A stretch of 64,000 bases of DNA from IMG/VR virus record IMGVR_UViG_3300005056_000001, positions 62,001-126,000 of that record. One strand, written 5' to 3'. Position 1 is the stretch's first letter. Every line of letters starts with the position of its first letter. Below the pieces are notes generated by a model. It was given only the letters and a program-made list of their open reading frames with translations. It was not told the origin of the DNA and did not search any database. A program made the translations under genes and the position numbers. Positions 3,045 to 59,380 of this stretch are shown here, piece after piece.

Positions 3045-3911
3045 TTATAGGTTAATTTTAGCTGTTGGGTGTGTTGGTTTTGTGGTTAGGTTGTTGTTGC
3101 TTAATTCTACAAGTTTCAACTTTGTCAGATATTGAATGTTTGGTGGCTTTGTTAATTGGTTGTTATTCAGGAATAACCATTCCAATTTTGCTAAACCTTT
3201 AAGTATTGGAGGATCCGTAAGTTGGTTATTATTCAGGTCTAACCAATCCAAGTTGGCCAAGTAGTTGAGGTTTGGCAGGGTCGTTAGTTGGTTATTTCCT
3301 AAGTCTATACGCTCCAAGCTGACCAACGAATCTAGGTTTGGTGGTGTATTTAGTTGATTGCGGTTCAAGTATAGCGACTTTAATTTGGTTAAATCTTTAA
3401 GATTCGGTGGTTTGGTTAATCGGTTATTATTCAAATTTACATACACCAACTTAGCCAAACCATTAAGATTTGGTGGGGTTGTTAATTGATTATTCTCTAA
3501 TTCTAAAAGGTTCAAATTTATTAATGAATCAATATTCGGTGGGGCTGTTAGTTGTGTACAACTCAAATCTAGATACTCCAAATTAACTAGACCATCAAGA
3601 TTGGGCGGTTTTGTTAGATGGATGTTATTTATATGCAAAACAGTCAAGTTAATCAAACCGTCAAATATTGGTGGGGCTGTTATCTTGGTGTTATTTATAC
3701 ACACTCGCTTTAATTTAAACACCTGCTCAACCTTGGAAAATAATTCGTCTGTGTATTTAACCTCGCCATGCATTAGTAGGAATTGATATGTATTAATTAT
3801 GTCAGGAAATACACTTAGTACATTCACATTCCCGTTACGAATTTCAATCATTGCAATATCAACATTTTCGACACCAATTGTCGAAAGTAACCGTTTTATT
3901 TTATTCTTCAT
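3045..3911 (-). CDS. LRR protein, family A (22-aa modules; 10 modules)
   Basis: N-cap IKRLLST..NIDIAM..RNGNVNVLSVFP; LxxLxLxxNQLTTPPxL repeats; C-cap THPTAKINL. Confidence 0.95.
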   Translation of the reverse strand: MKNKIKRLLSTIGVENVDIAMIEIRNGNVNVLSVFPDIINTYQFLLMHGEVKYTDELFSKVEQVFKLKRVCINNTKITAPPIFDGLINLTVLHINNIHLTKPPNLDGLVNLEYLDLSCTQLTAPPNIDSLINLNLLELENNQLTTPPNLNGLAKLVYVNLNNNRLTKPPNLKDLTKLKSLYLNRNQLNTPPNLDSLVSLERIDLGNNQLTTLPNLNYLANLDWLDLNNNQLTDPPILKGLAKLEWLFLNNNQLTKPPNIQYLTKLKLVELSNNNLTTKPTHPTAKINL

Positions 3912-3963
3912 TTCTGTCTTGTTATATAGTGATGGTATGTCACCGTGGATTAAATTGTCATGC

Positions 3964-4986
3964 TTAGATGTTAATTTTTGCTGTTGGGTGTGTTAGCTGT
4001 ATTTTTAGGTGTGTTAGGTTTGGTGTTAGGCTGTTGTTCTCTAAACCTAAAAACTCTAGATTAGCCAAACTATCAACGTTTGGCGGAGTCGTTAATTGAT
4101 TGCCGTCTAGATATAACCACTTTAAACTTACCAATCCTTCAAGTATTGGTGGCGCAGTTAATTGATTGTCGTCTAAGTGCAAATGTCTTAACATGACCAA
4201 GCCTTCAAGTATCGGTGAAATTGTTAGTCTATTGTGGTTCAGGAATAACCGATCCAACTTTATCAAACCTTCAAGTATTGGTGGGTGATTCAGCTTGTTG
4301 TCCTCTAAATCCAACCTCTCCAAATTGACTAGACCATCAAGTATCGGTGGACGGCTCAAACTGTTGGTTGTTAAATCCAAACGCTTCAACTGTATCAAAC
4401 CTCCAAGTATTGGAGGTTCTATTAGTCGATTGTAGCTCAGATCTAAAGCCTCTAACCTGTACAATCCATTAAGAACAGGCGGGAGTGTTAGTTTGTTGTG
4501 GTTAATGTACACATGCTCTAGATTGACCAACCCCCCAAGAATGGGCGGTGTCGTTAATTTGTTGTTGGTCAAGCTTAATTTCTTCAGCTTGACCAAGCCC
4601 TCGAGGCTTGGTGGTGTAGTTAATCTGTTGTTGCTTAACACCAACCTCTTTAGGTTTACCAAACCGTTAAGAATAGGCGATGTCGATGAGGTTAGTTTAT
4701 TGTTGCTCAGATATAACTGTTCCAAATTAACCAATCCATCAAGAATTACTATGTGCTTTAGGTTGTTGTTTAAGTATAAACGCTTCAGTCTGAAAACTTG
4801 CTCAATCTTACAAAATATATCATCCGTGGCTTTAACCTTGTCATTACACAGTAGGAATTTATAGGTGTCGAGTATGTTCGGAAACACACTCAACACATCC
4901 ACGTTCCCGTTGCGAAAATTAGCCATTGCAAGATCTATATTTACATCGTCGCCTGATACTAGGAGTTGTTTTATTTTATTGTTCAT
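3964..4986 (-). CDS. LRR protein, family A (12 modules)
   Basis: Start reset to the ATG at 4986 (MNNKIKQLL), just after the upstream stop; same caps; ends THPTAKINI. Confidence 0.95.
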   Translation of the reverse strand: MNNKIKQLLVSGDDVNIDLAMANFRNGNVDVLSVFPNILDTYKFLLCNDKVKATDDIFCKIEQVFRLKRLYLNNNLKHIVILDGLVNLEQLYLSNNKLTSSTSPILNGLVNLKRLVLSNNRLTTPPSLEGLVKLKKLSLTNNKLTTPPILGGLVNLEHVYINHNKLTLPPVLNGLYRLEALDLSYNRLIEPPILGGLIQLKRLDLTTNSLSRPPILDGLVNLERLDLEDNKLNHPPILEGLIKLDRLFLNHNRLTISPILEGLVMLRHLHLDDNQLTAPPILEGLVSLKWLYLDGNQLTTPPNVDSLANLEFLGLENNSLTPNLTHLKIQLTHPTAKINI

Positions 4987-4990
4987 TCTT

Positions 4991-5845
4991 TTAATCTTCC
5001 TTAAGGCTATACAAATCAAAAAATTTCACAAAATCAGCACAGTCCTCATTCGTTTTAAATTTTATTTCGGCTCCATTATTCGAGGCAAAAAATCGAATCG
5101 ACTTGACACAACTCTCCTTGTTTTCTAGCTTATAGGTCTGTATTACCATACTATCCCCGCTATTTTTTGGAATATCGGCATATAGTTCCGATATCACAGG
5201 AATCCCTGTCTCATACAGACTCAAGGCCCTAAGCAAGGCACGCAGTCTCCAACAACCGCTACTCTCTAGGGTGCTTTGATAAGTCCAAAGAGAATAAAGC
5301 CATACATCGGTTTTCAATGATTTACCTTTGATGTTCATTCTTTTTTGACTGTGTAAGACAGACTTTAAGTCTTCCTTGCACTTATGTACGCCGCTATCAA
5401 AAAGACCTTGTCCGTTTAATTGTTGGACATACACAGGAAGCAATTCGGTGGACAGATCCCTCATATTCACAAGCGTTGACTTTGTGTCACTGTCAATATT
5501 TAAATCAAGGTTATACGCATGGTTTAAGTATCTTGTGTATCTGTCAATGATGTCATAGACACGACACATGTGTATAATTTCCAAACGCTCGGACAGTTTA
5601 GAAAAATTATATTCCAAGACATCCTCCCTGTCGGAAACATCGTCACCCTTGATCCAAAATTTTTCGGGCGGGCAATTGTACTTGTGGAGCTCCATTAGTT
5701 GGTCAATATACTTTCTGTGGGCATCATTGGACTCGTTCAGCCCGTCCAAGTCGGCCTGAAGAATTGCCAAATATTCACGGTCTGACTTTGAGAAAATTGA
5801 TTTTTCTTCTAATTCAACATTTAAGATGTCGTTTAATAATGTCAT
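4991..5845 (-). CDS. hypothetical protein (284 aa)
   Basis: Long ORF. The C-terminus SIRFFASNNGAEIKF..DCADFVKFF resembles ends of proteins I recall beside methylase-helicase genes (unverified). Confidence 0.7.
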   Translation of the reverse strand: MTLLNDILNVELEEKSIFSKSDREYLAILQADLDGLNESNDAHRKYIDQLMELHKYNCPPEKFWIKGDDVSDREDVLEYNFSKLSERLEIIHMCRVYDIIDRYTRYLNHAYNLDLNIDSDTKSTLVNMRDLSTELLPVYVQQLNGQGLFDSGVHKCKEDLKSVLHSQKRMNIKGKSLKTDVWLYSLWTYQSTLESSGCWRLRALLRALSLYETGIPVISELYADIPKNSGDSMVIQTYKLENKESCVKSIRFFASNNGAEIKFKTNEDCADFVKFFDLYSLKED

Positions 5846-6216: not shown

Positions 6217-6235
6217 TATATGATTTTATATTAAT

Positions 6236-6381
6236 TTGATAGCACTAAGGTATGGAATAACATTCAAAAAACAAAATCGTTTTGTGGGAAATGTTGGTTT
6301 TAACGTTTTGTTAACGTTTTTTTGGTGGCTTTAGAGGGCTTTGTTGTGAACCCATCTTATTCCTTGATGGTGTATTGTGGG
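6236..6381 (-). repeat. about 145-bp direct repeat, copy 1 (promoter module)
   Basis: Near-identical to 6885-7029; contains TTAACGTTTTGTTAAC and, on the minus strand, TACCTTAGTGCTATCA. Confidence 0.95.
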
Positions 6382-6457
6382 GTTGTGCATGGTTTTTTGT
6401 TATGGAGAGTTGACATCCGACGAGATCTAGTCTTGGTTTTGATGTATTAGTCGGTAG

Positions 6458-6865: not shown

Positions 6866-6884
6866 TATCTTGATTTATGATTAG

Positions 6885-7029: not shown

Positions 7030-7030
7030 T

Positions 7031-7972
7031 TTAAATGACGATCTCTGCCGTGGGATGTGTTGGTGGGATGGTTAATTGGTTGTTTTTCAAGTTTAAATAC
7101 CTCAACTTAACCAACCCATCAAGATTGGGAGATGTTGCTAACAGATTGTTTTTTAAATCTATAAACTCCAAGTTGATTAGCGAATCAAGGTTTGGGGGAG
7201 AACTTAATTTGTTGTTTCTCAAAAATAACATCTCCAACTTAACCAAGTCTTCAAGATTCGGTGGGGTCGTTAGTTGGTTGACTCCCAAATTCAAACGCTC
7301 CAAGGTAACCAAACCGTTTAGTGTTGGTGTTTTGGTTAGTTGGTTATGGCTAAGGTATAAAATCTTTAAATTTACCAACCCTGAAGTGTTCGGGGTAATC
7401 GTCAATTGGTTATTGTCCAAGTTTAAATATTCCAACTTAACCAATCCTTCAAGATTTGGTGGGGCTGTCAGTTGATTAATCTTCAAGTTTAAATATTCCA
7501 AGTTTATCAAGCCTTCAAGTATTGGCGGTTTTGTCAAATCATTGTCCTCCAAATTTAAATACTCTAACCGATACAAATTAACCAAACCCTCAAGATTTGG
7601 AGCAATCGTTAATTTATTATTGGTCAAATTTAAAACCCTTAAGCTGACTAGACCTTTTAGTATTGGCGGGGTGGTTAAGTGGTTGTTATACAAAAATAAC
7701 AGCGTCAGGTTCACTAACCCTTCGAGTATTGGCGGGGTTGTTAGTTGCATATTGTCTAAAGATAGTGTTTTTATTTTAAACACCTGCTCAACCTTACAAA
7801 ACAAGTCGTCAGACACATTTACTTTGTTGTGACTTACCAAAAAATCATATGTGTCAAGTATCCTAGGAAAAATACTCAACACATCAACATTCCCGTTACG
7901 AAAATTAGCCATTGCGAGTTCTATGTTTGCATCGTCGCCTGTGGTTAGTAGTTGTTTTATTTGGTTGTGCAT
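7031..7972 (-). CDS. LRR protein, family A (11 modules)
   Basis: MHNQIKQLLTTGDDANIELAMANFRNGNVDVLSIFP cap; 22-aa repeats; ends THPTAEIVI. Confidence 0.95.
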   Translation of the reverse strand: MHNQIKQLLTTGDDANIELAMANFRNGNVDVLSIFPRILDTYDFLVSHNKVNVSDDLFCKVEQVFKIKTLSLDNMQLTTPPILEGLVNLTLLFLYNNHLTTPPILKGLVSLRVLNLTNNKLTIAPNLEGLVNLYRLEYLNLEDNDLTKPPILEGLINLEYLNLKINQLTAPPNLEGLVKLEYLNLDNNQLTITPNTSGLVNLKILYLSHNQLTKTPTLNGLVTLERLNLGVNQLTTPPNLEDLVKLEMLFLRNNKLSSPPNLDSLINLEFIDLKNNLLATSPNLDGLVKLRYLNLKNNQLTIPPTHPTAEIVI

Positions 7973-8001: not shown

Positions 8002-9000
8002 TTAAATATCAATATGTGCCGTAGGGTGTGTTGGTGTACTTGTTAGTTGGTTGTTCTCTAAATCTAAACGATCCAAATTAACTAAAGTATCAATGATTGG
8101 TGATGTCGTCAGTCGGTTGTTGTATAAGTACAAAGCTCTTAGATTGGTCAATAATTTAAGATTAGGTGGTGTAGTTAATTGGTTATCGCCCAAATCCAAC
8201 CACATCAACCCTACCAAACCTTCAATAATTGTTGTGTTGGTTAATCGGTTACAATTCAAATACAAACAAGTCAAGTTAATTACCCCCCTAAGATCAGGAG
8301 AGCTCGTCAATACGTTACTGCTCAAATCTAACCACACTAGGTTAACCAATCCTTCAAGAATTAGTGGTGTCGTCAGTCGGTTCTCGCTCAAATCCAAACG
8401 CTTCAATTTTGCTAAATTCATAAGCTTTGGTGGTGTCGTTAATCGGTTTCTGCCTAGGGTTAAACGCTCCAAATTCACTAACGTATTAAGTGTTGGTGAA
8501 TCTGTTAGTTTGTTACTGCCTAAGTTTAAACCCTTTAAATTAACCAATCCATCAACTATTGGCGGATTAGTCAGTTGGTTATTGGTCAAATATAGAACCT
8601 CTAACCTTACCAACTTATCAAGAATCGGCGAAGTGGTTAACTTGTTATTATTCAAGTATAACCGCTTTAAATTAACCAACCCTTCAAGTATTGGCGGATT
8701 CGTTAATTGGTTCTTCCCCAAGTCCAAAACCTCCAAATTAATCAATCCCTCAAGTATTGGCGGACTAGTTAGTCGGTTACTAACTAAACTTAATCGTTTC
8801 AATCTAAAAACCTGCTCAACCTTAGAAAATAAGTCATCCGTGGATTTTACCTTGGCGTGCCATAGCAAGAATTTATACGTGTCAAATATCCTAGGAAAAA
8901 TACTCAACACATCAACATTCCCATTACGAAAATTAGCCATTGCGAGTTCTATGTTTACATCGTCGCCCGTGGTTAGTAGTTGTTTTATTTGGTTGTGCAT
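8002..9000 (-). CDS. LRR protein, family A (12 modules)
   Basis: First ~125 nt nearly identical to those of the 7031-7972 gene; ends THPTAHIDI. Confidence 0.95.
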   Translation of the reverse strand: MHNQIKQLLTTGDDVNIELAMANFRNGNVDVLSIFPRIFDTYKFLLWHAKVKSTDDLFSKVEQVFRLKRLSLVSNRLTSPPILEGLINLEVLDLGKNQLTNPPILEGLVNLKRLYLNNNKLTTSPILDKLVRLEVLYLTNNQLTNPPIVDGLVNLKGLNLGSNKLTDSPTLNTLVNLERLTLGRNRLTTPPKLMNLAKLKRLDLSENRLTTPLILEGLVNLVWLDLSSNVLTSSPDLRGVINLTCLYLNCNRLTNTTIIEGLVGLMWLDLGDNQLTTPPNLKLLTNLRALYLYNNRLTTSPIIDTLVNLDRLDLENNQLTSTPTHPTAHIDI

Positions 9001-13314: not shown

Positions 13315-13447
13315 ATTTTGTTTTATATTTTTTTTTTGTATGATTACAAATATAAACAAAAAATCCGTACCAAAGAATTTTGATACGGATTTTAATATAA
13401 AAATGTTTTTTGTGTGGGTTGGTAAAATTGGCAACGAAGGCTTTTAA

Positions 13448-37511: not shown

Positions 37512-38198
37512 ATGAAAACAACGAACAAAATAAATACTACCATTCTAAAATTACTTACATCAGGAAGTCGCAAAGACATAGATCATGCAATGTCAGTGTT
37601 TCGTGATGAAGATGTGGATGTGTTATGCATGTTCCCAAAAATAGTTGACACGTTCGAATTTCTGCTAGGTCATGGCAAGGTAAACCCCACGGACGATTTG
37701 CTTTTTAAGGCCGAGCAGGTCTTTAGGGTGGAGGGTTTATATTTAGTGAATAAACAATTGACGAGTCCCCCAATACTTGATGGTTTGGTGAATCTAGATT
37801 CGCTATTTTTATCGAATAATCAATTGACGATTCCTCCAATACTTGACGGGTTAGTAAACCTAACATATTTAGGGTTAGAGAACAATCAATTGACGATTCC
37901 CCCAATACTTCATGGGTTAAATAACTTGATATATTTATATCTAGAGAACAACCAACTAACCACACCACCGATTTTTGACGGTTTAGTGAACCTAAAATCT
38001 TTATGGTTGAATAATAACCAACTAGCTAACACTCCATCACTCGAAGGGTTGGTAAAGTTGGAGTTTTTGCATTTAAGCGACAATAAACTAAAAACACCGC
38101 CAAATCTTGATGGCTTGGTCAAGTTACAGGAGATATACTTAAGCCGCAATCCACTAGGTAACCCACCAACCCACAAAAGCGCAGTAATTCATATTTAA
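37512..38198 (+). CDS. LRR protein, family A (7 modules)
   Basis: Cap LKLLTSGSRKDIDHAM..DVLCMFP; ends THKSAVIHI. Confidence 0.95.
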   Translation: MKTTNKINTTILKLLTSGSRKDIDHAMSVFRDEDVDVLCMFPKIVDTFEFLLGHGKVNPTDDLLFKAEQVFRVEGLYLVNKQLTSPPILDGLVNLDSLFLSNNQLTIPPILDGLVNLTYLGLENNQLTIPPILHGLNNLIYLYLENNQLTTPPIFDGLVNLKSLWLNNNQLANTPSLEGLVKLEFLHLSDNKLKTPPNLDGLVKLQEIYLSRNPLGNPPTHKSAVIHI

Positions 38199-38295: not shown

Positions 38296-39050
38296 ATGAA
38301 AACTCGGAAAGAAATCGGCGAATCCATCATTATTGAATTACTTACACTAGGAAATCGTGATGATATAACCCGTGCAATGGATATATTTCGTAATGGAAAA
38401 GTGAATATATTAAGTATGTTCCCGAAAATACTCGACACCTTTGAGCTTCTGCTAAGCCATAACAAGGTAAACCCCACAGACGATTTGTTTTCAAAGACCG
38501 AGCAGGTATTTAGGTTGGAGTATTTATACTTGAACTACATTCAACTAACGACCCACCAATACTTGATGGTTTGGTAAACCTACAGGATCTTTATCTGAAC
38601 AACAACCAACTAACCACACCTCCAATACTTGATGGATTGGTAAACATAAGGTTGTTAGACCTAGAGTACAACCAATTAACCACACCACCGAATCTTAAAT
38701 CTTTGATAAACTTGGAGTTTTTAGAACTGAACGACAACCAACTAACGACACTACCGAATCTTGAAGGTTTATTAAAGTTAAAGAGGTTAGACTTGGACTA
38801 CAACCAATTAACGAACCCGCCACTGCTTAATGGTTTGGTAAATCTAAGACAGCTATTGTTGGGCGACAACCAATTGACTACACCGCCAATACTCGAAGGT
38901 TTGGTAAGGTTAGAGCATTTGGATTTAGATAATAACCAATTAATCACACCGCCGAATCTTGACGGATTACTCGATTTACAGGATGTGTATTTGAGCGGTA
39001 ACCAATTTACCACTCCACCAAGCCACCCACACGCCGAAATACGCATTTAA
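38296..39050 (+). pseudogene. LRR gene, family A, split by a 1-bp deletion (8 modules when rejoined)
   Basis: ACG ACC CAC CAA at 38548-38559 versus the consensus ACC CCA CCA: one C is missing from a C-run at 38552-38554. This joins ORFs 38296-38577 and 38571-39050. Confidence 0.85.
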
Positions 39051-39073: not shown

Positions 39074-39649
39074 ATGAAAAATCAAAAACATATACTAGAA
39101 ATATATAATTTTTTACTCAATTATGGAGAAGTCAAGCCAACAGACGACCTGTCCGCCAAGGTCGAAGAGCTCGAAAAAATAACAATTTTGGACTTGAGAT
39201 ATAGAAAATTGACTAGTATACCAAGCCTAGAGGCATTGGTGAATTTAGAACTCTTGGATTTGGACAATAACGACCTGACCGATCCTCCAATACTCAAGGG
39301 CTTGGTAAATCTAAAGCAGTTGTATTTGGGCCATAACCAACTTGAAACCCCTCCAAATCTTGAAGGATTGGTAAAATTAAATGTTTTAGCCTTAAACGAC
39401 AACCAACTAACAACCCCACCAAACCTAGAAGGGTTATCAATACTGAACGTTTTATATTTAGACAACAATAAACTGATGACGACACCCAATCTTGATGGGC
39501 TGTCAAACCTAGAGCGTGTACATTTAAACGGTAATCACCTAAGCACACCACCGAACCTAGAAGGCTTAAACAGATTAACATGGGCACGTTTTGAGAACAA
39601 CCCACTAACAACCCCACCAACACACCCAACAGCGACAATTGATATTTAA
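39074..39649 (+). CDS. LRR protein, family A, short-cap type (7 modules)
   Basis: Begins at the ILE.Y.FLL..G.VK.TDDL part of the cap; ends THPTATIDI. Confidence 0.95.
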   Translation: MKNQKHILEIYNFLLNYGEVKPTDDLSAKVEELEKITILDLRYRKLTSIPSLEALVNLELLDLDNNDLTDPPILKGLVNLKQLYLGHNQLETPPNLEGLVKLNVLALNDNQLTTPPNLEGLSILNVLYLDNNKLMTTPNLDGLSNLERVHLNGNHLSTPPNLEGLNRLTWARFENNPLTTPPTHPTATIDI

Positions 39650-39672: not shown

Positions 39673-40320
39673 ATGGTTACAAAAAAAAGCATACTAGAAA
39701 CATACGATTTTCTTCTTAAACACGACAAGGTCAAAGCAACAGTCGATGTGTCTGCCAAGATTAAGGAAGTCAAAAAAATCGTTGTGTTAGAGTTGGGTTC
39801 TGAAGAGTTGACCAACATACCGAGCCTTGCAGGCTTGGTTAATTTGTTGATTTTAGATTTGGGCTGTAACGAACTCACCACACTTCCGAGTCTAGAAGGA
39901 TTGGTAAAATTGGAGATTTTAGATTTAGCCAACAACAAAATAACTACACCGCCAATACTAGAAGGATTGGTAAGATTAAGCACCTTATTCTTGGACAACA
40001 ACGATCTAAACACACCGCCAAATCTTGAAGGCTTAATTAGATTGGAGACCTTGCACCTGAGCTCTAATAAACTAAAAACACCACCAAATCTTGAAGGCTT
40101 AATTAGATTGGAGACCTTGCACCTGAGCTCTAATAAACTAAAAACACCACCCAATCTTAAGGGTGTGCCGATTCTAGTAATGTTGGTATTAAACGACAAC
40201 AAATTAACAACTCCGCCAAACCTTGAAGGATTGTCCAATTTGAGAGATGTATACTTATACAACAACCCACTAACAAGCATACCAACCCACCCAACCGCAT
40301 CAATTAATATTGAAGATTAA
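39673..40320 (+). CDS. LRR protein, family A, short-cap type (8 modules)
   Basis: Contains a perfect 66-bp duplication; ends THPTASINIED. Confidence 0.95.
   Translation: MVTKKSILETYDFLLKHDKVKATVDVSAKIKEVKKIVVLELGSEELTNIPSLAGLVNLLILDLGCNELTTLPSLEGLVKLEILDLANNKITTPPILEGLVRLSTLFLDNNDLNTPPNLEGLIRLETLHLSSNKLKTPPNLEGLIRLETLHLSSNKLKTPPNLKGVPILVMLVLNDNKLTTPPNLEGLSNLRDVYLYNNPLTSIPTHPTASINIED
40018..40149 (+). repeat. perfect 2 x 66-bp tandem duplication of one LRR module
   Basis: 40018-40083 is identical to 40084-40149. Confidence 0.97.
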
Positions 40321-46727: not shown

Positions 46728-47462
46728 ATGAACGATAAAATTAAGCAATTGCTTGCATCAGGCGACGATGCAAATATAGAACTTGCAATGGCTAATTTTC
46801 GTAACGGGAATGTGGATGTACTGAGTGTTTTCCCGAATATACTGAAGACGTTCGAACTTTTGCTTTTTCACTGTATGGTTGACCATACAGATGACTTGCT
46901 TTTTAAGGTTGAGCAGGTGTTTAACATTAAGCAGTTATACTTGGATAACTTCCAACTAATTAGTCCGCCAATACTAGAAGGTTTGGTTAGGTTGGAGCGT
47001 TTGGATTTACGAAACAACCAACTGACCCAAACACCAAATCTTGAAGGATTGTTTAGGTTGGAGTGTTTGGATTTACAAAATAACCAACTGACAACCCCAC
47101 CAAATATAAAAGGATTGGTAAATTTAGAGTATTTATACCTGTGTGACAACCGACTGAAAAAGCCGCAAAACATTAAAGGATTGGTAAATTTGGAGTGGTT
47201 GTATTTGGGTAATAACCAATTGACTACTCCACCAATACTTGATGGTTTAGTAAAGCTGAAGGTATTAGATTTGAATCATAACAATTTAATCACTCCACCA
47301 ATGCTAGATGGTTTAGTAAAGCTGAAGGCATTATTTTTGGAGAATAACCAACTAACAAAACCGCTAAGTATAAAGGGATTGGTAGAACTGAAATTTTTAC
47401 ATTTACAGAACAACCCACTCAAAACAAAACCATCCCACCCAACAGCCGAAATATACATTTAA
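46728..47462 (+). CDS. LRR protein, family A (8 modules)
   Basis: MNDKIKQLLASGDDANIELAMANFRNGNVDVLSVFP; ends SHPTAEIYI. Confidence 0.95.
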   Translation: MNDKIKQLLASGDDANIELAMANFRNGNVDVLSVFPNILKTFELLLFHCMVDHTDDLLFKVEQVFNIKQLYLDNFQLISPPILEGLVRLERLDLRNNQLTQTPNLEGLFRLECLDLQNNQLTTPPNIKGLVNLEYLYLCDNRLKKPQNIKGLVNLEWLYLGNNQLTTPPILDGLVKLKVLDLNHNNLITPPMLDGLVKLKALFLENNQLTKPLSIKGLVELKFLHLQNNPLKTKPSHPTAEIYI

Positions 47463-47483: not shown

Positions 47484-48526
47484 ATGAAACCTCAAAAAAC
47501 AATCAACATACTAAATACCTACGAATTCCTACTAAAGCACGGCAAGGTCAAAGCAACAGACGATTTGTCTGTTAAGATAAAAGTACTCGAAATGGTCGTG
47601 TCGTTAGATTTAGCCTCTAAGCAGCTAACACTCATACCGTGTCTTGAGGGTTTGGTGAACTTGGTACGTTTAGACCTTAGCTACAACCAACTGACCACTC
47701 CGCCAATACTCAAAGGTTTGTGTGGCTTGAAGGTTTTACTTTTGCATAATAATCAATTGACTACGGCACCAAATCTTGAAGGTGTTGTAAGGTTAGAGTG
47801 GTTACACTTGAGTGATAATCAACTGACCTCACCACCAAACCTTGAAGGCTTGGTGAAGTTGGAGCTGTTATACTTAGACGACAATCAATTAACTGCGCCA
47901 CCAATACTTGAAGGATTGGTAAATTTAAAGTGGTTATATCTAGACGGCAATCAATTAACTACTCCGCCAATGCTTAATGGTTTGGTAAATTTGGAGCGAT
48001 TACATCTAGACGGCAATCAATTAACAACTCCGCCAATACTTAATGGATTGGTAAATTTGGAGCTGTTATACTTAGACGGCAATCAATTAACTGCGCCACC
48101 AATGGTTTGGTAAATTTGGAGCGATTACATCTAGACGGCAATCAATTAACAACTCCGCCAATACTTAATGTTTTGGTAAATTTAGAGCGATTGAAATTAA
48201 ACAGTAACAGCCTAGACAAAACACCAAATCTAGAAGGTTTAGTAAACTTGGCTTTTTTGGATCTCGGTCACAACAAATTGACGTTACAGCCAATACTAGA
48301 AGGTTTGGTTTACTTGAGAGGTTTAAGTTTGTGTCACAACCAACTAACAACCCCACCAATCCTTAAAGGTTTGGTTAATTTGGAGCGTTTATACCTGAGT
48401 CACAACAGACTAGACAGATCACCAACGCTCGATGGATTGTTGAAATTGAAGTGGTTAGACCTAGGCAACAACCCACTTAAGACAAAAACAAAACCATCCC
48501 ACCCAACAGCAGAAATTAACATTTAA
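47484..48526 (+). pseudogene. LRR gene, family A, short-cap type, split by a 7-bp deletion (14 modules when rejoined)
   Basis: CCAATGGT at 48099-48106 versus the consensus CCAATACTTAATGGT; joins ORFs 47484-48113 and 48107-48526. Confidence 0.88.
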
Positions 48527-51846: not shown

Positions 51847-52410
51847 ATGAGAATTAAAATAGACGGCAATTATTTTGATATTCCTAGTGAAGGAATGATT
51901 ACATTTAAAACGATTGACATAAGAAATCATTTTAATTATTCCACGTGTGATATTGATATGCACGTGGATAAGGGTGCGATATATAAATGTGACATATATA
52001 GCATAAGAAATATATCCCTACGAAGAACAAGGCTACGGAATGTGTTGTTGGGTCAGATCATTGAACAGGGTATTTTTGTTGAGGTTATTGAGCCAACAAC
52101 CAAGGGTAGCGAGTTTACTATCCGATACAGCAACAATAACCCATATGCCGATTTAATTGCCGACTTGATGGAGGTCGAGAAATACAACAAGAGCAGAGGC
52201 TTTAGAAGGTTCCTGTCAATGGACTCCGACACTATCGAATTTGAATTCTATGGAAGTCAGGGGTGCCGTAATTATGCCTCGGCTATGCATGCAAGTGACA
52301 TCATAGATTGCATCAAAGACAAAACAGGCAAGACTCCACAATGGAACCGCCAAAAAAGTTGGGACAGCAACAGCCTAACACATGCATATAATTTTAAAAT
52401 TACGCTATAA
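51847..52410 (+). CDS. hypothetical protein (187 aa)
   Basis: First gene after a promoter module. Confidence 0.7.
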   Translation: MRIKIDGNYFDIPSEGMITFKTIDIRNHFNYSTCDIDMHVDKGAIYKCDIYSIRNISLRRTRLRNVLLGQIIEQGIFVEVIEPTTKGSEFTIRYSNNNPYADLIADLMEVEKYNKSRGFRRFLSMDSDTIEFEFYGSQGCRNYASAMHASDIIDCIKDKTGKTPQWNRQKSWDSNSLTHAYNFKITL

Positions 52411-53075
52411 TGAAAAATCCACACAAGCAGGCAGACATGAACAGGCTATCCGAACTCCTAAAGTCGGGAAACAAGGAGAATATAGAGCTCGCCTTTCAAT
52501 TAACCGAATCAAACAACATCGGACTAGATTTATTTGGATGGTGCATGCTATCGGAGTGGCTATACAGGTTTTGGGTTATCGGACACTATAAACCCCTAGA
52601 GGAGGCAATTATCATGATCGGTGAAATTCGGGAGTTGGTAATCGTAGACGAGAACCTGTTAAAAGTCCCTCGTTATATTGGTCTCATGTCCAATTTAACA
52701 TCCATACATTTTAGGTCTAGCCGTCTTAATAAATTGCCAAAAGAAATAGGAGATTTGCCTAACATCAAAGATTTAACTGTGGTGGGTGGCAGCTTTTCCG
52801 AATTTCCTTCCACATTTTCCAATATGAATAATTTGGAGCATCTTTGTTTAAACGATCTTGGACTAGATGTGGTTCCTGATTTTATTTGCAAGACTCCTAG
52901 TATAAAAAGGTTGTTTTTGGAAACCAACAAAATAACCGAGATACCAAAAGACATCGAAAATATTACATCCTTGGAAGAACTATTTTTGCATGGTAATCTT
53001 ATTAAAGAATTTCCAAGGACTATAGGCAGTCTTAAATGTATTGGTGCAAACAAAGGCAGTTATTCGAATTATTAG
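52410..53075 (+). CDS. LRR protein, family B with helical N-cap
   Basis: LLKSGNKENIELAFQL cap; 23-aa LP.EIG.L repeats. Confidence 0.92.
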   Translation: MKNPHKQADMNRLSELLKSGNKENIELAFQLTESNNIGLDLFGWCMLSEWLYRFWVIGHYKPLEEAIIMIGEIRELVIVDENLLKVPRYIGLMSNLTSIHFRSSRLNKLPKEIGDLPNIKDLTVVGGSFSEFPSTFSNMNNLEHLCLNDLGLDVVPDFICKTPSIKRLFLETNKITEIPKDIENITSLEELFLHGNLIKEFPRTIGSLKCIGANKGSYSNY

Positions 53076-53111
53076 AACAACTGTCCCTAACCATTTAATA
53101 CCTAGTAAAAT

Positions 53112-53804
53112 ATGAAGGACTCCGACAAGCTACTCAATCTAATAAATTCGGGTGTAAAGGAAAATATTGAGCTCGCCTTTCAGTTGCACAAATCCAATGG
53201 TATACCATTGGATTTGTGGGCATGGTCAGAACTTGCCGAATGGCTGTATAAATATCGACTAATAAAATCCTACAAGTCGTTGGAAGAGGCGATTGTTAAG
53301 ATTTTCGACATACGAGAGGTATATGTGACAAGTGATTTACTAGAAAACATAACAGAGCATATCGGTCTTATGGTCGGCTTGGAATGTATTAGTTTTATAT
53401 CCAAGAAGGTAACCACACTGCCCGATAGTATATCAAAACTAACACACCTAAAATATATCATCCTATACGGTTGCAATATAAAAACCCTGCCAAAATCCAT
53501 GTCAATGCTCACGAATCTTGTTAGTATTGACATGGATAGCAATGGAATGAAAGATCTACCCTCCGAAGTCTGTGATATCCCTAACCTTGAGAATTTGGAG
53601 ATTAGGTTCAACGATTTAACAACACTCCCCAAGAACATTGGAAATTTAAAAAAGCTAAAAAAGCTAAAACTTCAGGGCAATAAAATGGCGGTTCTTCCGA
53701 AATCTATTTGTATGCTACAATCACTAAAAGGACTTATGGCCAACGATACCTATATCACAATTGACGAGTTGGTACCCGATCAGGATGTGATTCTATTGTG
53801 TTAA
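53112..53804 (+). CDS. LRR protein, family B
   Basis: LINSGVKENIELAFQL cap; 23-aa repeats. Confidence 0.92.
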   Translation: MKDSDKLLNLINSGVKENIELAFQLHKSNGIPLDLWAWSELAEWLYKYRLIKSYKSLEEAIVKIFDIREVYVTSDLLENITEHIGLMVGLECISFISKKVTTLPDSISKLTHLKYIILYGCNIKTLPKSMSMLTNLVSIDMDSNGMKDLPSEVCDIPNLENLEIRFNDLTTLPKNIGNLKKLKKLKLQGNKMAVLPKSICMLQSLKGLMANDTYITIDELVPDQDVILLC

Positions 53805-53901
53805 TGTTTTGTTAAGACGCATTGGTTTTGGTGATATATTTTGTTTATTCGGATTTTATTTGTAATATTGTACTATCAATTAATGATTAACAAACAAGGA
53901 T

Positions 53902-54615
53902 ATGGTAACCACGGAACAACAAGAAGACATAGACAAGATAACATCACTCTTAAAATCGGGTGATAGTGCCAATATAGAGCTTGCATTCATGCTTATAAGT
54001 TCTAATAAATTAAGGATTTGTTTGTGGGCATGGGGCGACCTATCTGTGTATTTGCGAAACCATGGCGATTTGGGCAAATACAAAACATTCAATGATGGCA
54101 TTAGGAGAATAGGAGAAATGCGTGAACTCGCATTAAGACAAGGAAACCTTCACGGATTAGGTTCTTGTTTTTCATTCATGCCTTATTTGACAGGGCTTCA
54201 TTTGACACAATACAAGGACATAACACTTCCCGAAAATATAACAGAAATACACAATCTTAAATATATCGTTTTTGATGGATGTATAATAGAATCCTTGCCC
54301 AAAGGAATATCCACATTAAAAAACATTGTTCGTATAGACATTGACTGTCATAATATGAATGCGCTCCCGAAAGGAATATGCACCATCCCCAATCTTGAGA
54401 CATTGACCATTAGATTTAGCAAGCTCACAAGCCTCCCAAATAATATTGGAGACCTAAAACACCTTAAAAAGTTGGTGATTGACGGCAAACAAATCGAGTC
54501 ACTTCCTGAATCCATCAACCGCCTAGGAAACTTGACGGAAATTATTGTCAAGAATGGCATTGTCGATATTAGTAATTTGGCTCCTAATATAATTGACTTG
54601 ATTAAAACTGCTTAG
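53902..54615 (+). CDS. LRR protein, family B
   Basis: LLKSGDSANIELAFML cap; 23-aa repeats. Confidence 0.92.
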   Translation: MVTTEQQEDIDKITSLLKSGDSANIELAFMLISSNKLRICLWAWGDLSVYLRNHGDLGKYKTFNDGIRRIGEMRELALRQGNLHGLGSCFSFMPYLTGLHLTQYKDITLPENITEIHNLKYIVFDGCIIESLPKGISTLKNIVRIDIDCHNMNALPKGICTIPNLETLTIRFSKLTSLPNNIGDLKHLKKLVIDGKQIESLPESINRLGNLTEIIVKNGIVDISNLAPNIIDLIKTA

Positions 54616-54618
54616 AAC

Positions 54619-55320
54619 ATGAAGGACACACAAAAGATATGGGACTTGATCTATACGGCCCAAGAAGTAAATATAAACCTTGCGTTTACCTTGGCAGAGG
54701 CCAAAGGAATAGCATTAGATTTAAGTGCGTATCACGAGATTTTCGGGTGGTTACAGACCCATGAAACCGAGACTACAGAACATAAATCAGACCTAGAAAT
54801 ATTGATATATGTATTGACACTAGAAACGGTGACAGTGCCCTGTAAAGGACTGACCGAAATACCAAAATCAATAGGAAAACTTAGATCGCTTAAATGTCTT
54901 ATTTTGGGGTGGAATAAATTGACATACCTTCCTGATTCAATCGGAGAATTGAGCAACCTAGGAATGTTGCATGTCTTAGGAAACAAACTCACAAACCTGC
55001 CCGACACAATCGGGAATCTAACATTATTAGAATATCTATACGTTGGCGGTAACCAATTAACAGAACTTCCCGAAACGATTGGTGGTCTTAAAAATCTAAC
55101 AGAATTGTGCGTCAATAATAATAGATTGGAAACCATTCCAAAGACTATACTAAACCTAAAATATTTAGAAAAGATTGACATCAAAATGAACAACATAAAA
55201 GATATTCCTGACAGGCTTGGTTATCTTCCAAACCTGCGATGGTTACATCTTGGCAAAAAAGTATCCGAGAAGGTGAAAAACAACCTTACAAGCAACAAGA
55301 ACACAAATTGGTATGACTGA
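54619..55320 (+). CDS. LRR protein, family B
   Basis: LIYTAQEVNINLAFTL cap; LPDSIGEL-type repeats. Confidence 0.92.
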   Translation: MKDTQKIWDLIYTAQEVNINLAFTLAEAKGIALDLSAYHEIFGWLQTHETETTEHKSDLEILIYVLTLETVTVPCKGLTEIPKSIGKLRSLKCLILGWNKLTYLPDSIGELSNLGMLHVLGNKLTNLPDTIGNLTLLEYLYVGGNQLTELPETIGGLKNLTELCVNNNRLETIPKTILNLKYLEKIDIKMNNIKDIPDRLGYLPNLRWLHLGKKVSEKVKNNLTSNKNTNWYD

Positions 55321-56437
55321 TCAACAAAAGATAATGTGTCTTATTAAGACAGGAGATTTGACCAACATAAAAATGGGTCTTATGATGGCCAAATCAAACA
55401 AAATTGATTTGGACTTGTCCGAATATTGGGCCATACATCATTTTTTGGTTGTGTACAAAGAGTTGAAGCCTGCAAAAAATGATTACCACATGCTTGTATT
55501 GTTAATGGGCGTGACACACCTACACTTACACGATATCAGGATACTGCATATTCCTGAATCCTTTGGTTGTCTTCATAATCTAAAAACTTTTGGTATTAGA
55601 AACGCAGGAATTAGTAGCCTTCCTGATTCTATCGGTAATCTCAAAAACTTGGACAGTATTAGGATATCACGCACAAACCTAACACATCTCCCTGAATCAA
55701 TATGCGCAATCACAGGGTTGGTCACTATATTTATAGAGGACAATAGTCTGTCTTGTCTGCCAAAAGACATTGGTAATCTGACCAATATTAAACGCCTGAT
55801 GATTATTGAGGAAAATATCAAAACGCTTCCCGAATCCATAGGGAATATGTCGGCATTGGAAAATCTGTCAATTCAAAATTGCTTTCTTGAAAGTCTTCCT
55901 GAATCAATAGGCGATTTACAGGGCTTGTGTGTGTTGTATTTAGAAGGAAATAAACTCACAACAATACCCAAAACCATAGGCAAATTACAAAAATTGGAAT
56001 TATTAAAAGTTTCTGATAATTTGTTACAATCGCTTCCTGATACGTTATTCGACCTAATTAATTTGCGTCATTTAAGCGCAATGAAATGTGGTTTAGAAGA
56101 CCTACCAAAAGACATTGGCAGACTAATCAATCTTGAGTATCTAGGGCTTGGTGGTAATAAACTAACTTCCTTGCCAAAAAGCATTGCCAAGCTGTCTAAA
56201 ATGGAGACTCTGATTTTGGCAAGGAACGAAATAAGCATGTTCCCCAAGGAAATAACCTCACTAAGCAAACTAAAATATCTAAGACTCCGTTTTAACAACA
56301 TAAAACAATTCCCAAAAGAAATAGTCAATTTAAAAGAATTAATTAGTCTATCGGTAGACATGAATCCTGCAACATACGAACATATATGTTGGCTCATAGA
56401 TATATTGCCACACACAAATATTAATTACAGAAACTAA
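55313..56437 (+). CDS. LRR protein, family B (longest, ~13 repeats)
   Basis: LIKTGDLTNIKMGL cap; LPESIGxL repeats. Confidence 0.93.
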   Translation: MTDQQKIMCLIKTGDLTNIKMGLMMAKSNKIDLDLSEYWAIHHFLVVYKELKPAKNDYHMLVLLMGVTHLHLHDIRILHIPESFGCLHNLKTFGIRNAGISSLPDSIGNLKNLDSIRISRTNLTHLPESICAITGLVTIFIEDNSLSCLPKDIGNLTNIKRLMIIEENIKTLPESIGNMSALENLSIQNCFLESLPESIGDLQGLCVLYLEGNKLTTIPKTIGKLQKLELLKVSDNLLQSLPDTLFDLINLRHLSAMKCGLEDLPKDIGRLINLEYLGLGGNKLTSLPKSIAKLSKMETLILARNEISMFPKEITSLSKLKYLRLRFNNIKQFPKEIVNLKELISLSVDMNPATYEHICWLIDILPHTNINYRN

Positions 56438-56443
56438 AAAAAT

Positions 56444-56845: not shown

Positions 56846-56884
56846 TTTCCACCCGAAAGAAAATCAAATTTACAATAGGCCCTT

Positions 56885-58189
56885 GTGTCTCAAAATATAA
56901 ATATGTTCAAAGGAAGAGAATACAACAAAAAATCAAAACCGTATGTTTATTATCATGCCCGATTTGTCTCCAACGATAATGCATGGTGTGTGCAGGCATA
57001 CAACCGTGACCACATGGACGAGATTATTTGTAGAAACAAGAAAAATGAGGAGGCCTATATAAAAGGACGGACTCATTCGTTTAAAACAGACGAAAATTAT
57101 GAATGGCGTTATCTGAGGATCCCGCATATCTATACGTTTTCCATGGAAAAATGTCTGATAGTACACAAACGGGTATTGTTTGAAACCGAGGAAGAGGCAA
57201 AAAGCTTTATAATCGAATATGAAAACTTTTGTGGGCCTCTTGACTCGATTTGTCCAAGGTATAATCGTGGATCAAAAATAGTGGATGACAACATCAGGTC
57301 AAGTATGTTCCTGTACTTGGATTATGACATTAACCACAACAAATTTTTGGTGGACAATAATTTGTCAAGCGAAGACGAATTTACAAACCACAACAAAAAA
57401 CTTTTCTCGGTTGCCCTGCTTGGTGGAAGGCTTGTTTATGTGAACCTGACGGATGTTGTTGGATACAACATTGATGGGGGGAAAATGCTTCCGTATTTTA
57501 TGTGGAGCGAAGACCTCGACCGTTTGGTTGCTATGTCATACGACAGCCCGCTACTTCGAGAGACCGTTTATTACAAAACCAAACAAAGGGAAGGATTTTT
57601 CAACAGGCTGTTTGGTATCAAAGAAAAAATTGCCACAAAATTCAGGGGGTATTATATTAAACATACTCCAACCTTCCTAGAAGATCCATTAAGCTTTACG
57701 GGTGACACAAGGATGTGTGAATTTATACGTTGTGCCTACAAGTTTAAGGATTTTAAGGACTATGAGGGGTATGGTCTAACGTGTGGGTACGAAGGTTTTA
57801 ATGAGTCGGTACAGACGCTTTATACGGACATAGGAAACCTTCAACAATTATTGACCAACATTCAGCTATGTGAGCGTTTTAATTCATCCGAAGTAATCTA
57901 TAATAGTTGTAGGATATATGCGGCCATGGGACAGTCGGGTGGTTGCCATATAAACCAAGAAATTAGTTACTACACAAAAAACTTTAGTAAGCCCGTCAAG
58001 GAGCATGGTATAAAGTTCATTTTTGATGTTGGGAGTCCTAGATACAAGGATGTCTGTTCGGGCAAGCAAGGCATAAACACAACAGGAGAACTAGATTTCA
58101 AATACGGCACCGAGGCATATCTGTACAGGGACACTCTTGACGAGCTGTATAGAATTATTGACGAAAAAAAATTTAATATATTACAATAA
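56885..58189 (+). CDS. hypothetical protein (434 aa)
   Basis: Long ORF; no motif recognised. Confidence 0.75.
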   Translation: MSQNINMFKGREYNKKSKPYVYYHARFVSNDNAWCVQAYNRDHMDEIICRNKKNEEAYIKGRTHSFKTDENYEWRYLRIPHIYTFSMEKCLIVHKRVLFETEEEAKSFIIEYENFCGPLDSICPRYNRGSKIVDDNIRSSMFLYLDYDINHNKFLVDNNLSSEDEFTNHNKKLFSVALLGGRLVYVNLTDVVGYNIDGGKMLPYFMWSEDLDRLVAMSYDSPLLRETVYYKTKQREGFFNRLFGIKEKIATKFRGYYIKHTPTFLEDPLSFTGDTRMCEFIRCAYKFKDFKDYEGYGLTCGYEGFNESVQTLYTDIGNLQQLLTNIQLCERFNSSEVIYNSCRIYAAMGQSGGCHINQEISYYTKNFSKPVKEHGIKFIFDVGSPRYKDVCSGKQGINTTGELDFKYGTEAYLYRDTLDELYRIIDEKKFNILQ

Positions 58190-58249
58190 AATTTAATATA
58201 TTACAATAAATTTAATATATTACAATAAATTTAATATATTACAATAAAA
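58172..58249 (+). repeat. 4 x 19-20-bp tandem repeat TTTAATATATTACAATAAA(A)
   Basis: Copies start at 58172, 58192, 58211 and 58230; the first spans the stop codon of the upstream gene. Confidence 0.95.
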
Positions 58250-58257
58250 TTAAAATT

Positions 58258-58839
58258 ATGATAGACAGGATATATTCTAGCCATTGGATGTTTATGGTGT
58301 TTTTCTTATTATTCATGAGCAACCCAATGTTCTTGGGTGTCAATAGTGATTGGACATTAAATAATGTTTTTTGGGTATGTATGATCGTAAACATCATTTT
58401 TTTTATATACACACGGAACGAATGGAGGAATAATCTAAGACCCGAAAAGCGAATAGTAATAGTTAAGGCCATGGCTAGTATATCCATTGTGTTTTCAATA
58501 GGATTTATTTGTTATAGCATAATTCATTTACCTATTGCACCACTAGGACTATACGTTTTTATACCCTTTACTTTTGTGTATTATATGATATATCATGTGT
58601 GTCTGACATGGGATATATTTAAAGCGAATATAACATATGCTCATGGCAAGATATTTATAATTTCATGTTTTCTTATTTGTTGGTATATATTCAGGATACG
58701 TTTTTTCTTTCCGCCCTTTGAATACAAGTCAAGCCTGATTTTTTCAATACTAAATATATTATTACTTCTTTTTTTGATATATCCTATTACATTGGTACCA
58801 CCAAAAGAAATAGAACTGATTGATCATTTGGTCGAGTAA
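58258..58839 (+). CDS. integral membrane protein (193 aa, ~6 TM)
   Basis: Almost entirely hydrophobic helices. Confidence 0.8.
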   Translation: MIDRIYSSHWMFMVFFLLFMSNPMFLGVNSDWTLNNVFWVCMIVNIIFFIYTRNEWRNNLRPEKRIVIVKAMASISIVFSIGFICYSIIHLPIAPLGLYVFIPFTFVYYMIYHVCLTWDIFKANITYAHGKIFIISCFLICWYIFRIRFFFPPFEYKSSLIFSILNILLLLFLIYPITLVPPKEIELIDHLVE

Positions 58840-58933
58840 TCATTAATGAAATGTTAAAAATTATCAAAAGGAGCCCAATAATTTGGTTTATAACTCTTGT
58901 TGTTGTAATATTGTTCTAACAAAAACAAACAAC

Positions 58934-59380
58934 ATGTCTTTAAAGGATTTAATCAACACAGGCAATCACAATAATATTATCCTTGCCTTTACATTGGCAA
59001 AGAGTAATAATACTGCGATTATTGGAAAATGTAGACCGTGTTTCGGGCTTCTGTTGTATGTCCTCATGCAACACCATGACAACCATACCATGGATTGGAA
59101 GATATACAGAAATTGTTTTCTGTATTTAGAATATGACAAACAGATCCTTGGGCAATTGGTCACTATCGGTTTTGATGCAGAGGTTAGATACAAAAACAAC
59201 TCAAAACGAAAGACTGACCGTGTTATTTTGGTGAATTGTACCGATTTTATCGAGACAATCTTTAATCTAGTAACTGTTGAGGGGGATATTGTCGAATACA
59301 GGAGGGGTTTGTTTGGATATAGAAACTATAACAGCAACAAGTTTATTGCTGTCAAAACAACATTTGAAAAACACATTTAG
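58934..59380 (+). CDS. protein with the LRR-family N-cap but no LRRs
   Basis: Start reset to ATG 58934: MSLKDLINTGNHNNIILAFTLAKSNN, then an unrelated domain. Confidence 0.7.
   Translation: MSLKDLINTGNHNNIILAFTLAKSNNTAIIGKCRPCFGLLLYVLMQHHDNHTMDWKIYRNCFLYLEYDKQILGQLVTIGFDAEVRYKNNSKRKTDRVILVNCTDFIETIFNLVTVEGDIVEYRRGLFGYRNYNSNKFIAVKTTFEKHI

What the first reader, a model, noticed from the sequence alone, without database searches (positions are those of the whole stretch)
3045..59380. A portable N-terminal cap (L[LI]x[ST]GxxxNIxLA) unites both LRR families and one non-LRR protein
Seen: the motif heads family A long-cap genes (LLTTGDDANIELAM), the five family B genes at 52410-56437 (LLKSGNKENIELAF) and the 58934 gene (LINTGNHNNIILAF), which has no LRRs. 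Three family A genes (39074, 39673, 47484) lack exactly this segment and sit 21-23 nt behind another family A gene. Inference: the cap may be a docking or targeting tag, analogous to the F-box in F-box-LRR adaptors, delivering variable target binders to a common partner. Cap-less versions would then be free binders. It may instead be only a solenoid-capping element.
Basis: partly seen in the sequence, partly recalled or inferred. Interest (0 to 1): 0.68.

Follow-up and report, generated by a model that had tools for sequence, protein, structure and literature searches.

The report
Portable helical hairpin capping phage LRRs
A conserved helix-turn-helix hairpin of about 30 residues heads most leucine-rich-repeat proteins of this 368-kb jumbo phage and one unrelated protein. 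It also occurs on other protein types in other phages, so it is a real, mobile, undescribed module, but nothing yet shows it is more than a structural end-cap.

Summary
The strict motif occurs 8 times in the window, against about 0.00015 expected. A profile finds it at the head of 18 ORFs in the whole 368-kb phage: 7 family A, 5 family B, 5 outside the window, and the non-LRR gene at 58934. Family A and family B caps are homologous (hhalign 94.8%). The 58934 match is not chance (33 bits when left out of the profile) and is kept at the protein level.

The three cap-less family A genes start exactly at helix 3, and sit 21 to 23 nt behind another A gene.

AlphaFold places the motif as helices 1-2 of a rigid four-helix cap on the first LRRs (pLDDT 97.5, pTM 0.89). 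The fold resembles the internalin cap only weakly.

A profile search of 1.84 billion proteins gave 89 real hits:
- at least 52 are followed by LRRs
- two are pentapeptide-repeat proteins
- one small non-LRR phage family
- one about 400-aa protein with the hairpin at its C-terminus
- one BRCT protein with internal copies

No Pfam, NCBIfam, PHROG or PDB family matches the hairpin. Portability is therefore supported. A docking role like an F-box is untested, and no partner was found. The best reading is a mobile end-cap hairpin of Bacteroidota-associated phage and bacterial proteins.

The parts
3045..3911 (-). Family A LRR gene with a degenerate cap; hairpin H1-H2 at about 3819-3911
   Evidence: Cap profile E 1.7e-13; LRR motifs; aligned in A1 and A6
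3964..4986 (-). Family A LRR gene, capped; hairpin at about 4894-4986 (ATG at 4986, not the upstream TTG at 5019)
7031..7972 (-). Family A LRR gene, capped; hairpin at about 7880-7972
   Evidence: (LRR_4 1.8e-30)
8002..9000 (-). Family A LRR gene, capped; hairpin at about 8908-9000
37512..38198 (+). Family A LRR gene with a divergent cap behind a 6-residue extension; hairpin at about 37530-37622
38296..39050 (+). Family A gene, capped (hairpin at about 38317-38409), broken by a frameshift near 38550-38577 into ORFs 38296-38577 and 38571-39050
39074..39649 (+). Cap-less family A LRR gene; starts at helix 3, 23 nt behind the previous A gene
39673..40320 (+). Cap-less family A LRR gene; starts at helix 3, 23 nt behind 39074-39649
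46728..47462 (+). Family A LRR gene, capped; hairpin at about 46728-46820
47484..48526 (+). Cap-less family A LRR gene, 21 nt behind 46728-47462; broken by a frameshift near 48100 into ORFs 47484-48113 and 48107-48526
52410..53075 (+). Family B LRR gene, capped; hairpin at about 52434-52526
53112..53804 (+). Family B LRR gene, capped; hairpin at about 53118-53210. Residues 1-122 were modelled: H1 3-12, H2 16-29, H3 36-47, H4 57-65, then LRR strands
53902..54615 (+). Family B LRR gene, capped; hairpin at about 53926-54018
54619..55320 (+). Family B LRR gene with a degenerate cap (no Gly in the turn); hairpin at about 54625-54717
55313..56437 (+). Family B LRR gene with a degenerate cap; hairpin at about 55319-55411
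58934..59380 (+). Orphan 148-aa gene. The hairpin (residues 2-29, nt 58934-59020) is followed by a non-LRR sequence with no homologue
   Evidence: in-frame coding score like its neighbours

Best explanation
The motif is a real, homologous helix-turn-helix hairpin of about 30 residues.
- Helix 1 carries K-[IL]-x-x-L-[IL].
- The turn is [TS]-G-D-x-x-N.
- Helix 2 carries N-I-x-L-A-[FLY]-x-L-A-K-S.

**Where it sits.** In the LRR proteins it forms the outer two helices of a four-helix N-terminal cap. That cap packs as one rigid body on the first repeats. These proteins have no signal peptide, so they are presumably cytoplasmic. They belong to Bacteroidota-associated phages and some Bacteroidota bacteria.

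**How it probably works (inferred).** Helix 2 has two hydrophobic faces. One packs on helix 1 and the other on whatever follows, so the hairpin shields the exposed end of a solenoid or small domain. It acts as a self-contained end-cap or clip.

**Its evolution.** Because it is self-contained, it has been shuffled:
- combined with at least three kinds of helix 3-4
- lost once in family A
- placed on pentapeptide solenoids and on a few non-repeat proteins, including the orphan gene at 58934

**The LRR bodies.** They are variable binders. The concave-face positions are the most variable, and repeat numbers differ among paralogues. The phage has expanded them to roughly 25 genes.

**Shown:** homology, distribution, portability, predicted cis packing, and dispensability for keeping an LRR reading frame open.
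**Inferred:** the capping role. An additional partner-binding role is not excluded.
For: - Motif statistics and genome census.
- A and B caps are homologous.
- Conservation is at the protein level: about half of the identical residues use different codons.
- AlphaFold2 model of residues 1-122 of the 53112 protein with a 71-sequence alignment: pLDDT 97.5, pTM 0.89, four helices then LRR strands.
- Structural neighbours are LRR proteins. Internalins align from model residue 8-12 onward, including their own helical caps, at Z 5.6-7.2. A Bacteroidota LRR cluster in the ESM Atlas aligns over residues 1-122 at TM 0.60.
- Public profile search: 89 real hits. 75 have the hairpin within the first 12 residues and at least 52 have Pfam LRRs.
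- In three hit proteins that carry two LRR blocks (P0003, P0024, P0030), a hairpin precedes each block. The second copy in P0030 is seen by eye only.
- In the two pentapeptide proteins the hairpin abuts the first repeat directly.
- The best-conserved columns are hydrophobic or turn positions: L10 97%, N18 100%, I19 91%, L21 94%, A22 92%.
- Other LRR genes of this phage carry degenerate versions of the hairpin, as expected of a structural element drifting freely.
Against: - The hairpin also occurs where no solenoid needs capping: the P0073/P0074 family, P0068, P0083, the 58934 protein, the C-terminal end of P0061 and P0035, and between BRCT domains in P0063, more than 130 residues from the LRRs.
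- Cap-less paralogues show that helices 3-4 can head an LRR protein without it.
- Some polar, probably exposed positions are fairly conserved (K6 80%, E20 56%, Q24 49%, K/E27 82%). The hits were selected with this very profile, so these figures are inflated.
- No model coordinates were available, so packing and exposure are read from secondary structure, pTM and helical periodicity only.
- No stability or expression data exist.
Confidence: 0.55

Rival explanations
1. Docking or targeting tag. The hairpin binds one common partner, either a host (Bacteroidota) protein or a phage protein. It thereby delivers variable binders (LRR, pentapeptide and others) or small effectors to that partner, in the way an F-box delivers LRR adaptors to Skp1. 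The cap-less paralogues would then be free binders.
For: - It is portable across unrelated downstream domains and positions: N-terminal, C-terminal and internal.
- It is found in very different phages: this 368-kb phage, G002 (an incomplete 135.8-kb record with 13 matches, 12 of them distinct genes), a 110-kb contig with three capped genes of different types, a T7-like 30-kb contig, and an integrase-bearing element.
- It is kept by protein-level selection on the orphan 58934 protein.
- It is dispensable for an LRR reading frame.
- Polar positions K6, E20, Q24 and K27 are semi-conserved.
Against: - No partner is known.
- There is no F-box, HEAT or other adaptor family match.
- The predicted packing on the LRR is rigid and in cis.
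- Most conserved residues are core or turn residues.
- In some viruses the hairpin is preceded by another N-terminal tag, so it is not itself the terminal signal.
- A cap+LRR gene also lies in an ordinary Bacteroidota-like chromosomal context.
Confidence: 0.25
2. Virion-packaging or ejection signal. The hairpin targets the proteins into the capsid, like the capsid-targeting sequences of T4 internal proteins, so that binders are injected with the DNA.
For: - It is usually at the extreme N-terminus (75 of 89 hits start within 12 residues).
- It heads many paralogous proteins of a jumbo phage.
- Jumbo phages are known to package paralogous internal proteins. This last point rests on general knowledge and was not tested here.
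Against: - The hairpin also occurs in a T7-like replication-gene block, in a bacterial chromosomal context, at a C-terminus and internally.
- Residue 20 is only 56% Glu, so there is no conserved protease-site pattern.
- It is predicted to be a folded part of the cap, not a cleavable leader.
Confidence: 0.07
3. Not a protein module at all. The motif would be a chance or convergent pattern, or a conserved nucleotide element (a 5' regulatory or recombination site) shared by the genes, with the 58934 match a recent fusion remnant.
For: - The motif is short (about 30 residues).
- The 58934 protein has no homologue, and its single-sequence fold prediction is poor (pLDDT 39).
Against: - The strict pattern is seen 8 times against 0.00015 expected.
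- Leave-one-out and foreign-only profiles still find 58934.
- 8 of the 14 residues identical between 58934 and 53112 use different codons.
- No LRR remnant follows in any frame.
- The in-frame coding score of 58934 is like that of its neighbours.
- 89 hits appear in unrelated metagenomes.
Confidence: 0.03

Closest known systems
Internalin N-terminal helical cap (Listeria InlB, InlC, InlH, InlF, InlJ, InlK; Pfam Internalin_N)
   Same: It is a small helical bundle directly preceding LRRs. Family A has 22-residue repeats, which is the internalin repeat length from general knowledge, not tested here. The model of the 53112 protein aligns to internalin residues about 36-131, cap included, at Z 5.6-7.2, rmsd 2.9-3.7 A, 81-90 residues.
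   Different: - There is no sequence match to Internalin_N or to any PDB chain.
- Z lies in the range the tool itself calls a common arrangement.
- The phage cap has an extra outer helix.
- The phage proteins have no signal peptide or cell-wall anchor.
- The outer hairpin occurs on non-LRR proteins, which is not known for the internalin cap.
F-box-LRR (FBXL) substrate adaptors
   Same: Both have an N-terminal helical motif of about 40-50 residues in front of a variable LRR binder. Both come as large paralogous expansions, and the motif also occurs on other binder domains.
   Different: - There is no F-box Pfam match.
- No Skp1/cullin-like partner is known for phage or Bacteroidota.
- The hairpin is predicted to be packed in cis on the cap.
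- The resemblance is an analogy of architecture only.
Bacterial cytoplasmic LRR proteins of the LRR_14/LRR_8 type (Leptospira LIC proteins; uncharacterised Bacteroidota LRR proteins)
   Same: - Family B repeats match these Pfam families.
- Leptospira LRR structures are the top Foldseek rows.
- A Bacteroidota Atlas cluster matches the model over its full length.
- One cap+LRR hit lies in a Bacteroidota-like chromosome.
   Different: The hairpin itself has no Pfam, NCBIfam or PHROG model. It is far commoner in phage-like contigs among the hits whose context was examined.
Short adaptor domains fused to diverse effectors in prokaryotic conflict systems (effector-associated or Death-like adaptor domains; recalled from the literature, see the abstract of PMC8195603)
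   Same: The concept is the same: a small helical module shared by otherwise unrelated proteins.
   Different: No sequence relation was tested or shown. Those adaptors pair with a copy on a core NTPase, and no such second carrier was found in this phage.

Membership tests
Leucine-rich repeat proteins (Pfam LRR_4, LRR_8, LRR_14) | Tandem LxxLxLxxN-type repeats recognised by the Pfam LRR models | tested here: met
   Met for the six family A and B genes scanned (E 1e-13 to 1e-46); the others are assigned by the LRR motif. Not met for the 58934 protein (0 families; no remnant).
F-box | Match to the F-box sequence profile (Pfam F-box and F-box-like) | tested here: not met
   No Pfam hit on cap segments even at E <= 10, nor on whole proteins at E <= 0.1.
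F-box | Binds Skp1 and recruits a cullin ligase | not testable with these tools
   No Skp1-like partner is known in the phage or its presumed hosts. No partner candidate was available to co-fold.
Internalin N-terminal cap (Internalin_N) | Match to the Internalin_N profile or to internalin sequences | tested here: not met
   No Pfam hit. The profile search of PDB sequences found only one chance 13-residue match.
Internalin N-terminal cap (Internalin_N) | Helical cap of the same fold packed on the first LRR | tested here: inconclusive
   VIA-align Z 5.6-7.2 over 81-90 residues including the cap. Foldseek found nothing at E <= 0.001. The Z values are within the tool's stated background range.
HEAT-like or ARM-like helical repeats | Match to HEAT, HEAT-like or ARM profiles | tested here: not met
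   No such Pfam hit on cap segments. The resemblance of the pattern is my recollection only. A profile-profile search against Pfam was not available.
Pentapeptide-repeat proteins (only for foreign carriers P0031 and P0058) | Match to the Pfam Pentapeptide model after the hairpin | tested here: met
   P0031 2.3e-25 and P0058 3.8e-11.
T4-type capsid targeting sequence | Short N-terminal leader removed by the prohead protease at a conserved site | not tested
   No virion proteome exists. Position 20 is Glu in only 56% of sequences, and the segment is predicted to be folded, which argues against this family.

The most novel reading that the evidence does not exclude
The hairpin is a previously undescribed docking module of Bacteroidota phages. 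It recruits interchangeable binder or effector domains (LRR, pentapeptide and small orphan domains such as that of the 58934 protein) to one conserved host or phage partner. That would make it a prokaryotic-virus counterpart of F-box-type modular adaptors. The cap-less paralogues would act as untethered binders or competitors.
Probability: 0.22. Interest if true: 0.78.

Novelty: new variant of a known kind. Interest (0 to 1): 0.5.

Why it matters
Leucine-rich-repeat expansions are unusual in phages. This one carries roughly 25 LRR genes, and a second large phage (G002) carries a dozen with the same hairpin.

The hairpin is an undescribed sequence family. It marks a whole class of presumably cytoplasmic phage binder proteins in Bacteroidota-associated viruses, so it could serve as a handle to find them in metagenomes.

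If it is only a cap, it is a compact, transferable capping unit of interest for repeat-protein engineering. If it docks to a common partner, it would reveal a modular adaptor system in phage-host conflict. That idea can be tested directly with a 30-residue bait.

Tried and rejected
**Searches for the 58934 protein**
- No match in GenBank phages (tblastn) or IMG/VR.
- No homologue of its C-terminal 119 residues among 5.8 billion proteins.
- No paralogue in the genome.
- The single-sequence AlphaFold model was unusable (pLDDT 39).

**Searches with the cap**
- A word-indexed search with the cap region of the 53112 protein returned only itself.
- Cap alignments A1 and A2 were too variable for the search for related loci on genome contigs.
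- A strict back-translated pattern in 185,579 species genomes gave one hit, a chance internal match in an archaeal enzyme. This says little about looser variants.
- The metagenome contig scan gave one locus, L031, which was not examined.
- ESM Atlas look-ups of the cap and of the P0096 C-terminal domain gave nothing usable.
- A homologue search with the C-terminal domain of P0096 found only close, equally capped relatives.

**Partner tests**
- Complex prediction of the cap-less 39074 protein (residues 1-110) with the hairpin end of the 58934 protein (residues 1-60) tested the idea of trans-complementation. It gave no verdict (score 0.02, controls not run). This is no evidence either way.
- A search for a gene shared by all cap-bearing contigs, as a candidate partner, found none.

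**Expression**
- Sequencing runs gave only small shares in subsurface metagenomes and no RNA.

**Other points**
- Rejected ideas: a recent frameshifted LRR remnant at 58934, and a nucleotide-level element.


Full report
**Setting.** The window is bases 62,001-126,000 of a 368,109-bp IMG/VR virus record with direct terminal repeats, that is, a complete jumbo phage. Recognisable neighbours are replication and repair genes: a helicase/methylase, an SbcC-like protein, an NAD-dependent DNA ligase and an NA37 nucleoid protein. Gene starts have A-rich leaders without Shine-Dalgarno sites. This fits a Bacteroidota host, but that is an inference.

**The observation.**
None appeared in 200 shuffles, and composition predicts 0.00015.
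- A 31-residue profile finds 18 ORFs in the whole genome at E <= 2e-9. These are seven family A genes, five family B genes, the 58934 gene, and five cap+LRR genes outside the window.
- Several further LRR genes carry degenerate versions. Only two LRR genes (11659-12498 and 12517-13434) have a different, strand-rich N-terminal domain.
- Family A and family B caps are homologous by profile-profile comparison: 94.8%, E 4.8e-8, 31 columns.
- The three cap-less family A genes begin exactly at the third helix. They lie 23, 23 and 21 nt behind the preceding family A stop codon. They share derived residues, so one loss followed by duplication is likely.

**The 58934 gene.**
- Its first 29 residues match the hairpin. 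With itself left out of the profile it scores 33.1 bits. With a profile built only from foreign metagenome proteins it scores 35.6 bits, E 1e-9 against the genome's ORFs.
- Of the 14 residues identical to the 53112 protein, 8 use different codons. The match is therefore old and kept at the protein level.
- The remaining 119 residues have no LRR and no LRR remnant in another frame. They have no paralogue and no homologue anywhere searched.
- The codon-usage score in frame resembles that of neighbouring genes. It looks like a real orphan gene, though its fold could not be predicted.

**Structure.**
- Residues 1-122 of the 53112 protein were folded with a 71-sequence alignment. The model has pLDDT 97.5 and pTM 0.89.
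- Its elements are helix 1 (3-12), helix 2 (16-29), helix 3 (36-47) and helix 4 (57-65), then LRR strands.
- The motif is therefore helices 1-2 of a four-helix cap, predicted as one rigid body with the first repeats.
- Foldseek finds only weak LRR matches.
- The exhaustive aligner ranks LRR proteins first. Internalins align from model residue 8-12 through their own helical caps at Z 5.6-7.2, a range the tool describes as possibly just a common arrangement.
- A Bacteroidota LRR cluster of the ESM Atlas matches residues 1-122 at TM 0.60.

**Is it a described family?** No. There is no Pfam hit on the cap even at E <= 10. NCBIfam, PHROGs and a profile search of PDB sequences also give nothing.

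**Distribution elsewhere.** A profile of 19 caps was searched against 1.84 billion representative proteins and gave 92 hits at E <= 0.001. Three are repeat artefacts.
- Of the 89 real hits, 75 have the hairpin within the first 12 residues. At least 52 have Pfam LRRs, and 23 are shorter than 110 residues, probably fragments.
- Three proteins hold two LRR blocks, each preceded by a hairpin. The second copy in P0030 is seen by eye only.
- The exceptions are:
  - two pentapeptide-repeat proteins, P0031 and P0058, confirmed by Pfam;
  - the P0073/P0074 family of about 142-aa non-LRR proteins, which has many close members;
  - P0068 and P0083, which are non-LRR singletons;
  - P0061 and P0035, where the hairpin ends an about 400-aa protein;
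  - P0063, where two copies lie beside BRCT domains, far from the C-terminal LRRs.
- Most contexts are phage-like:
  - a 110-kb contig with three capped genes of different kinds;
  - a T7-like replication block;
  - contigs with few known genes;
  - an integrase-bearing element;
  - a contig with lysis genes and Dnd-associated genes.
- One cap+LRR gene sits in a Bacteroidota-like chromosomal context.
- IMG/VR record G002, an incomplete 135.8-kb phage, carries 12 or more cap+LRR genes. Their helices 3-4 are of a third, unrelated type.

**Interpretation.** The evidence for function still favours a structural role:
- rigid cis packing;
- conservation mainly of hydrophobic and turn positions (these figures are inflated because the hits were selected with the same profile);
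- position directly in front of solenoids in most cases;
- free degeneration in some paralogues.

Against a purely structural role stand the non-solenoid carriers, the C-terminal and internal positions, and the cap-less paralogues. No partner could be proposed. A co-fold testing trans-complementation between a cap-less LRR protein and the 58934 hairpin gave no verdict. No gene is shared by all cap-bearing contigs.

I therefore rate 'mobile end-cap hairpin' at about 0.55 and 'docking tag' at about 0.25.

**The LRR bodies.** They behave as variable binders. In the 22-residue family A unit, the most variable positions are 3, 5 and 7 of the strand, and repeat numbers differ among paralogues.

**Limits.**
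- No coordinates, PAE or contacts were available.
- The host is unknown and no RNA data exist.
- The public census rests on one profile search with a 45-column model, so weaker or shorter relatives are missed.

Noticed in passing
window 38296-39050 and 47484-48526: Two family A genes are each split into two overlapping ORFs by a frameshift inside a repeat, near 38550-38577 and near 48100. Relative to intact repeats they differ in length by 1 nt and 7 nt. Both upstream ORFs end with the same three residues. These could be pseudogenes, assembly errors or repeat-mediated deletions.
   Followed up: partly
L013 (ENA contig, about 29 kb), genes between 3295 and 15723: Nine consecutive genes of unrelated length begin with the same N-terminal peptide of about 12 residues (MK-x-YIKKLLRE-[SG]). 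Two of them also carry the hairpin, one before LRRs and one at its C-terminus. A related N-terminal peptide heads the capped LRR genes in L015 and proteins P0019, P0045 and P0086. This second tag is absent from the window's phage.
   Followed up: partly
G002 (IMG/VR 135.8-kb record; loci L016, L018-L028): A second large phage carries 12 or more hairpin+LRR genes, many in tandem. Their helix 3-4 segment is of a third type that is conserved within that phage.
   Followed up: partly
window 11659-12498 and 12517-13434 (- strand): Two adjacent LRR genes lack the hairpin and have instead a shared, strand-rich N-terminal domain of about 100 residues. It was not identified.
   Followed up: no
window family A genes, last 10 codons: All complete family A genes end with a conserved tail (T/S-H-P-T-A-x-I-x-I), presumably a C-terminal capping strand.
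   Followed up: no
genome C1: 143218-143931, 187840-188775, 212904-213875, 213865-214581, 254772-255812: Further LRR genes outside the window have N-termini that look like eroded versions of the hairpin and fall below or near the profile threshold.
   Followed up: partly
window 44331-45422: A homologue of the bacterial 37-kDa nucleoid-associated protein (Pfam NA37, 1.5e-28) lies between the two family A clusters.
   Followed up: no
genome C1: 235289-236062: The phage has its own pentapeptide-repeat protein, related (37% identity) to the hairpin-bearing pentapeptide protein of L011, but without the hairpin.
   Followed up: partly
window 58000-60000: G+C falls to 0.327 around the 58934 gene, against about 0.38 elsewhere.
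   Followed up: no
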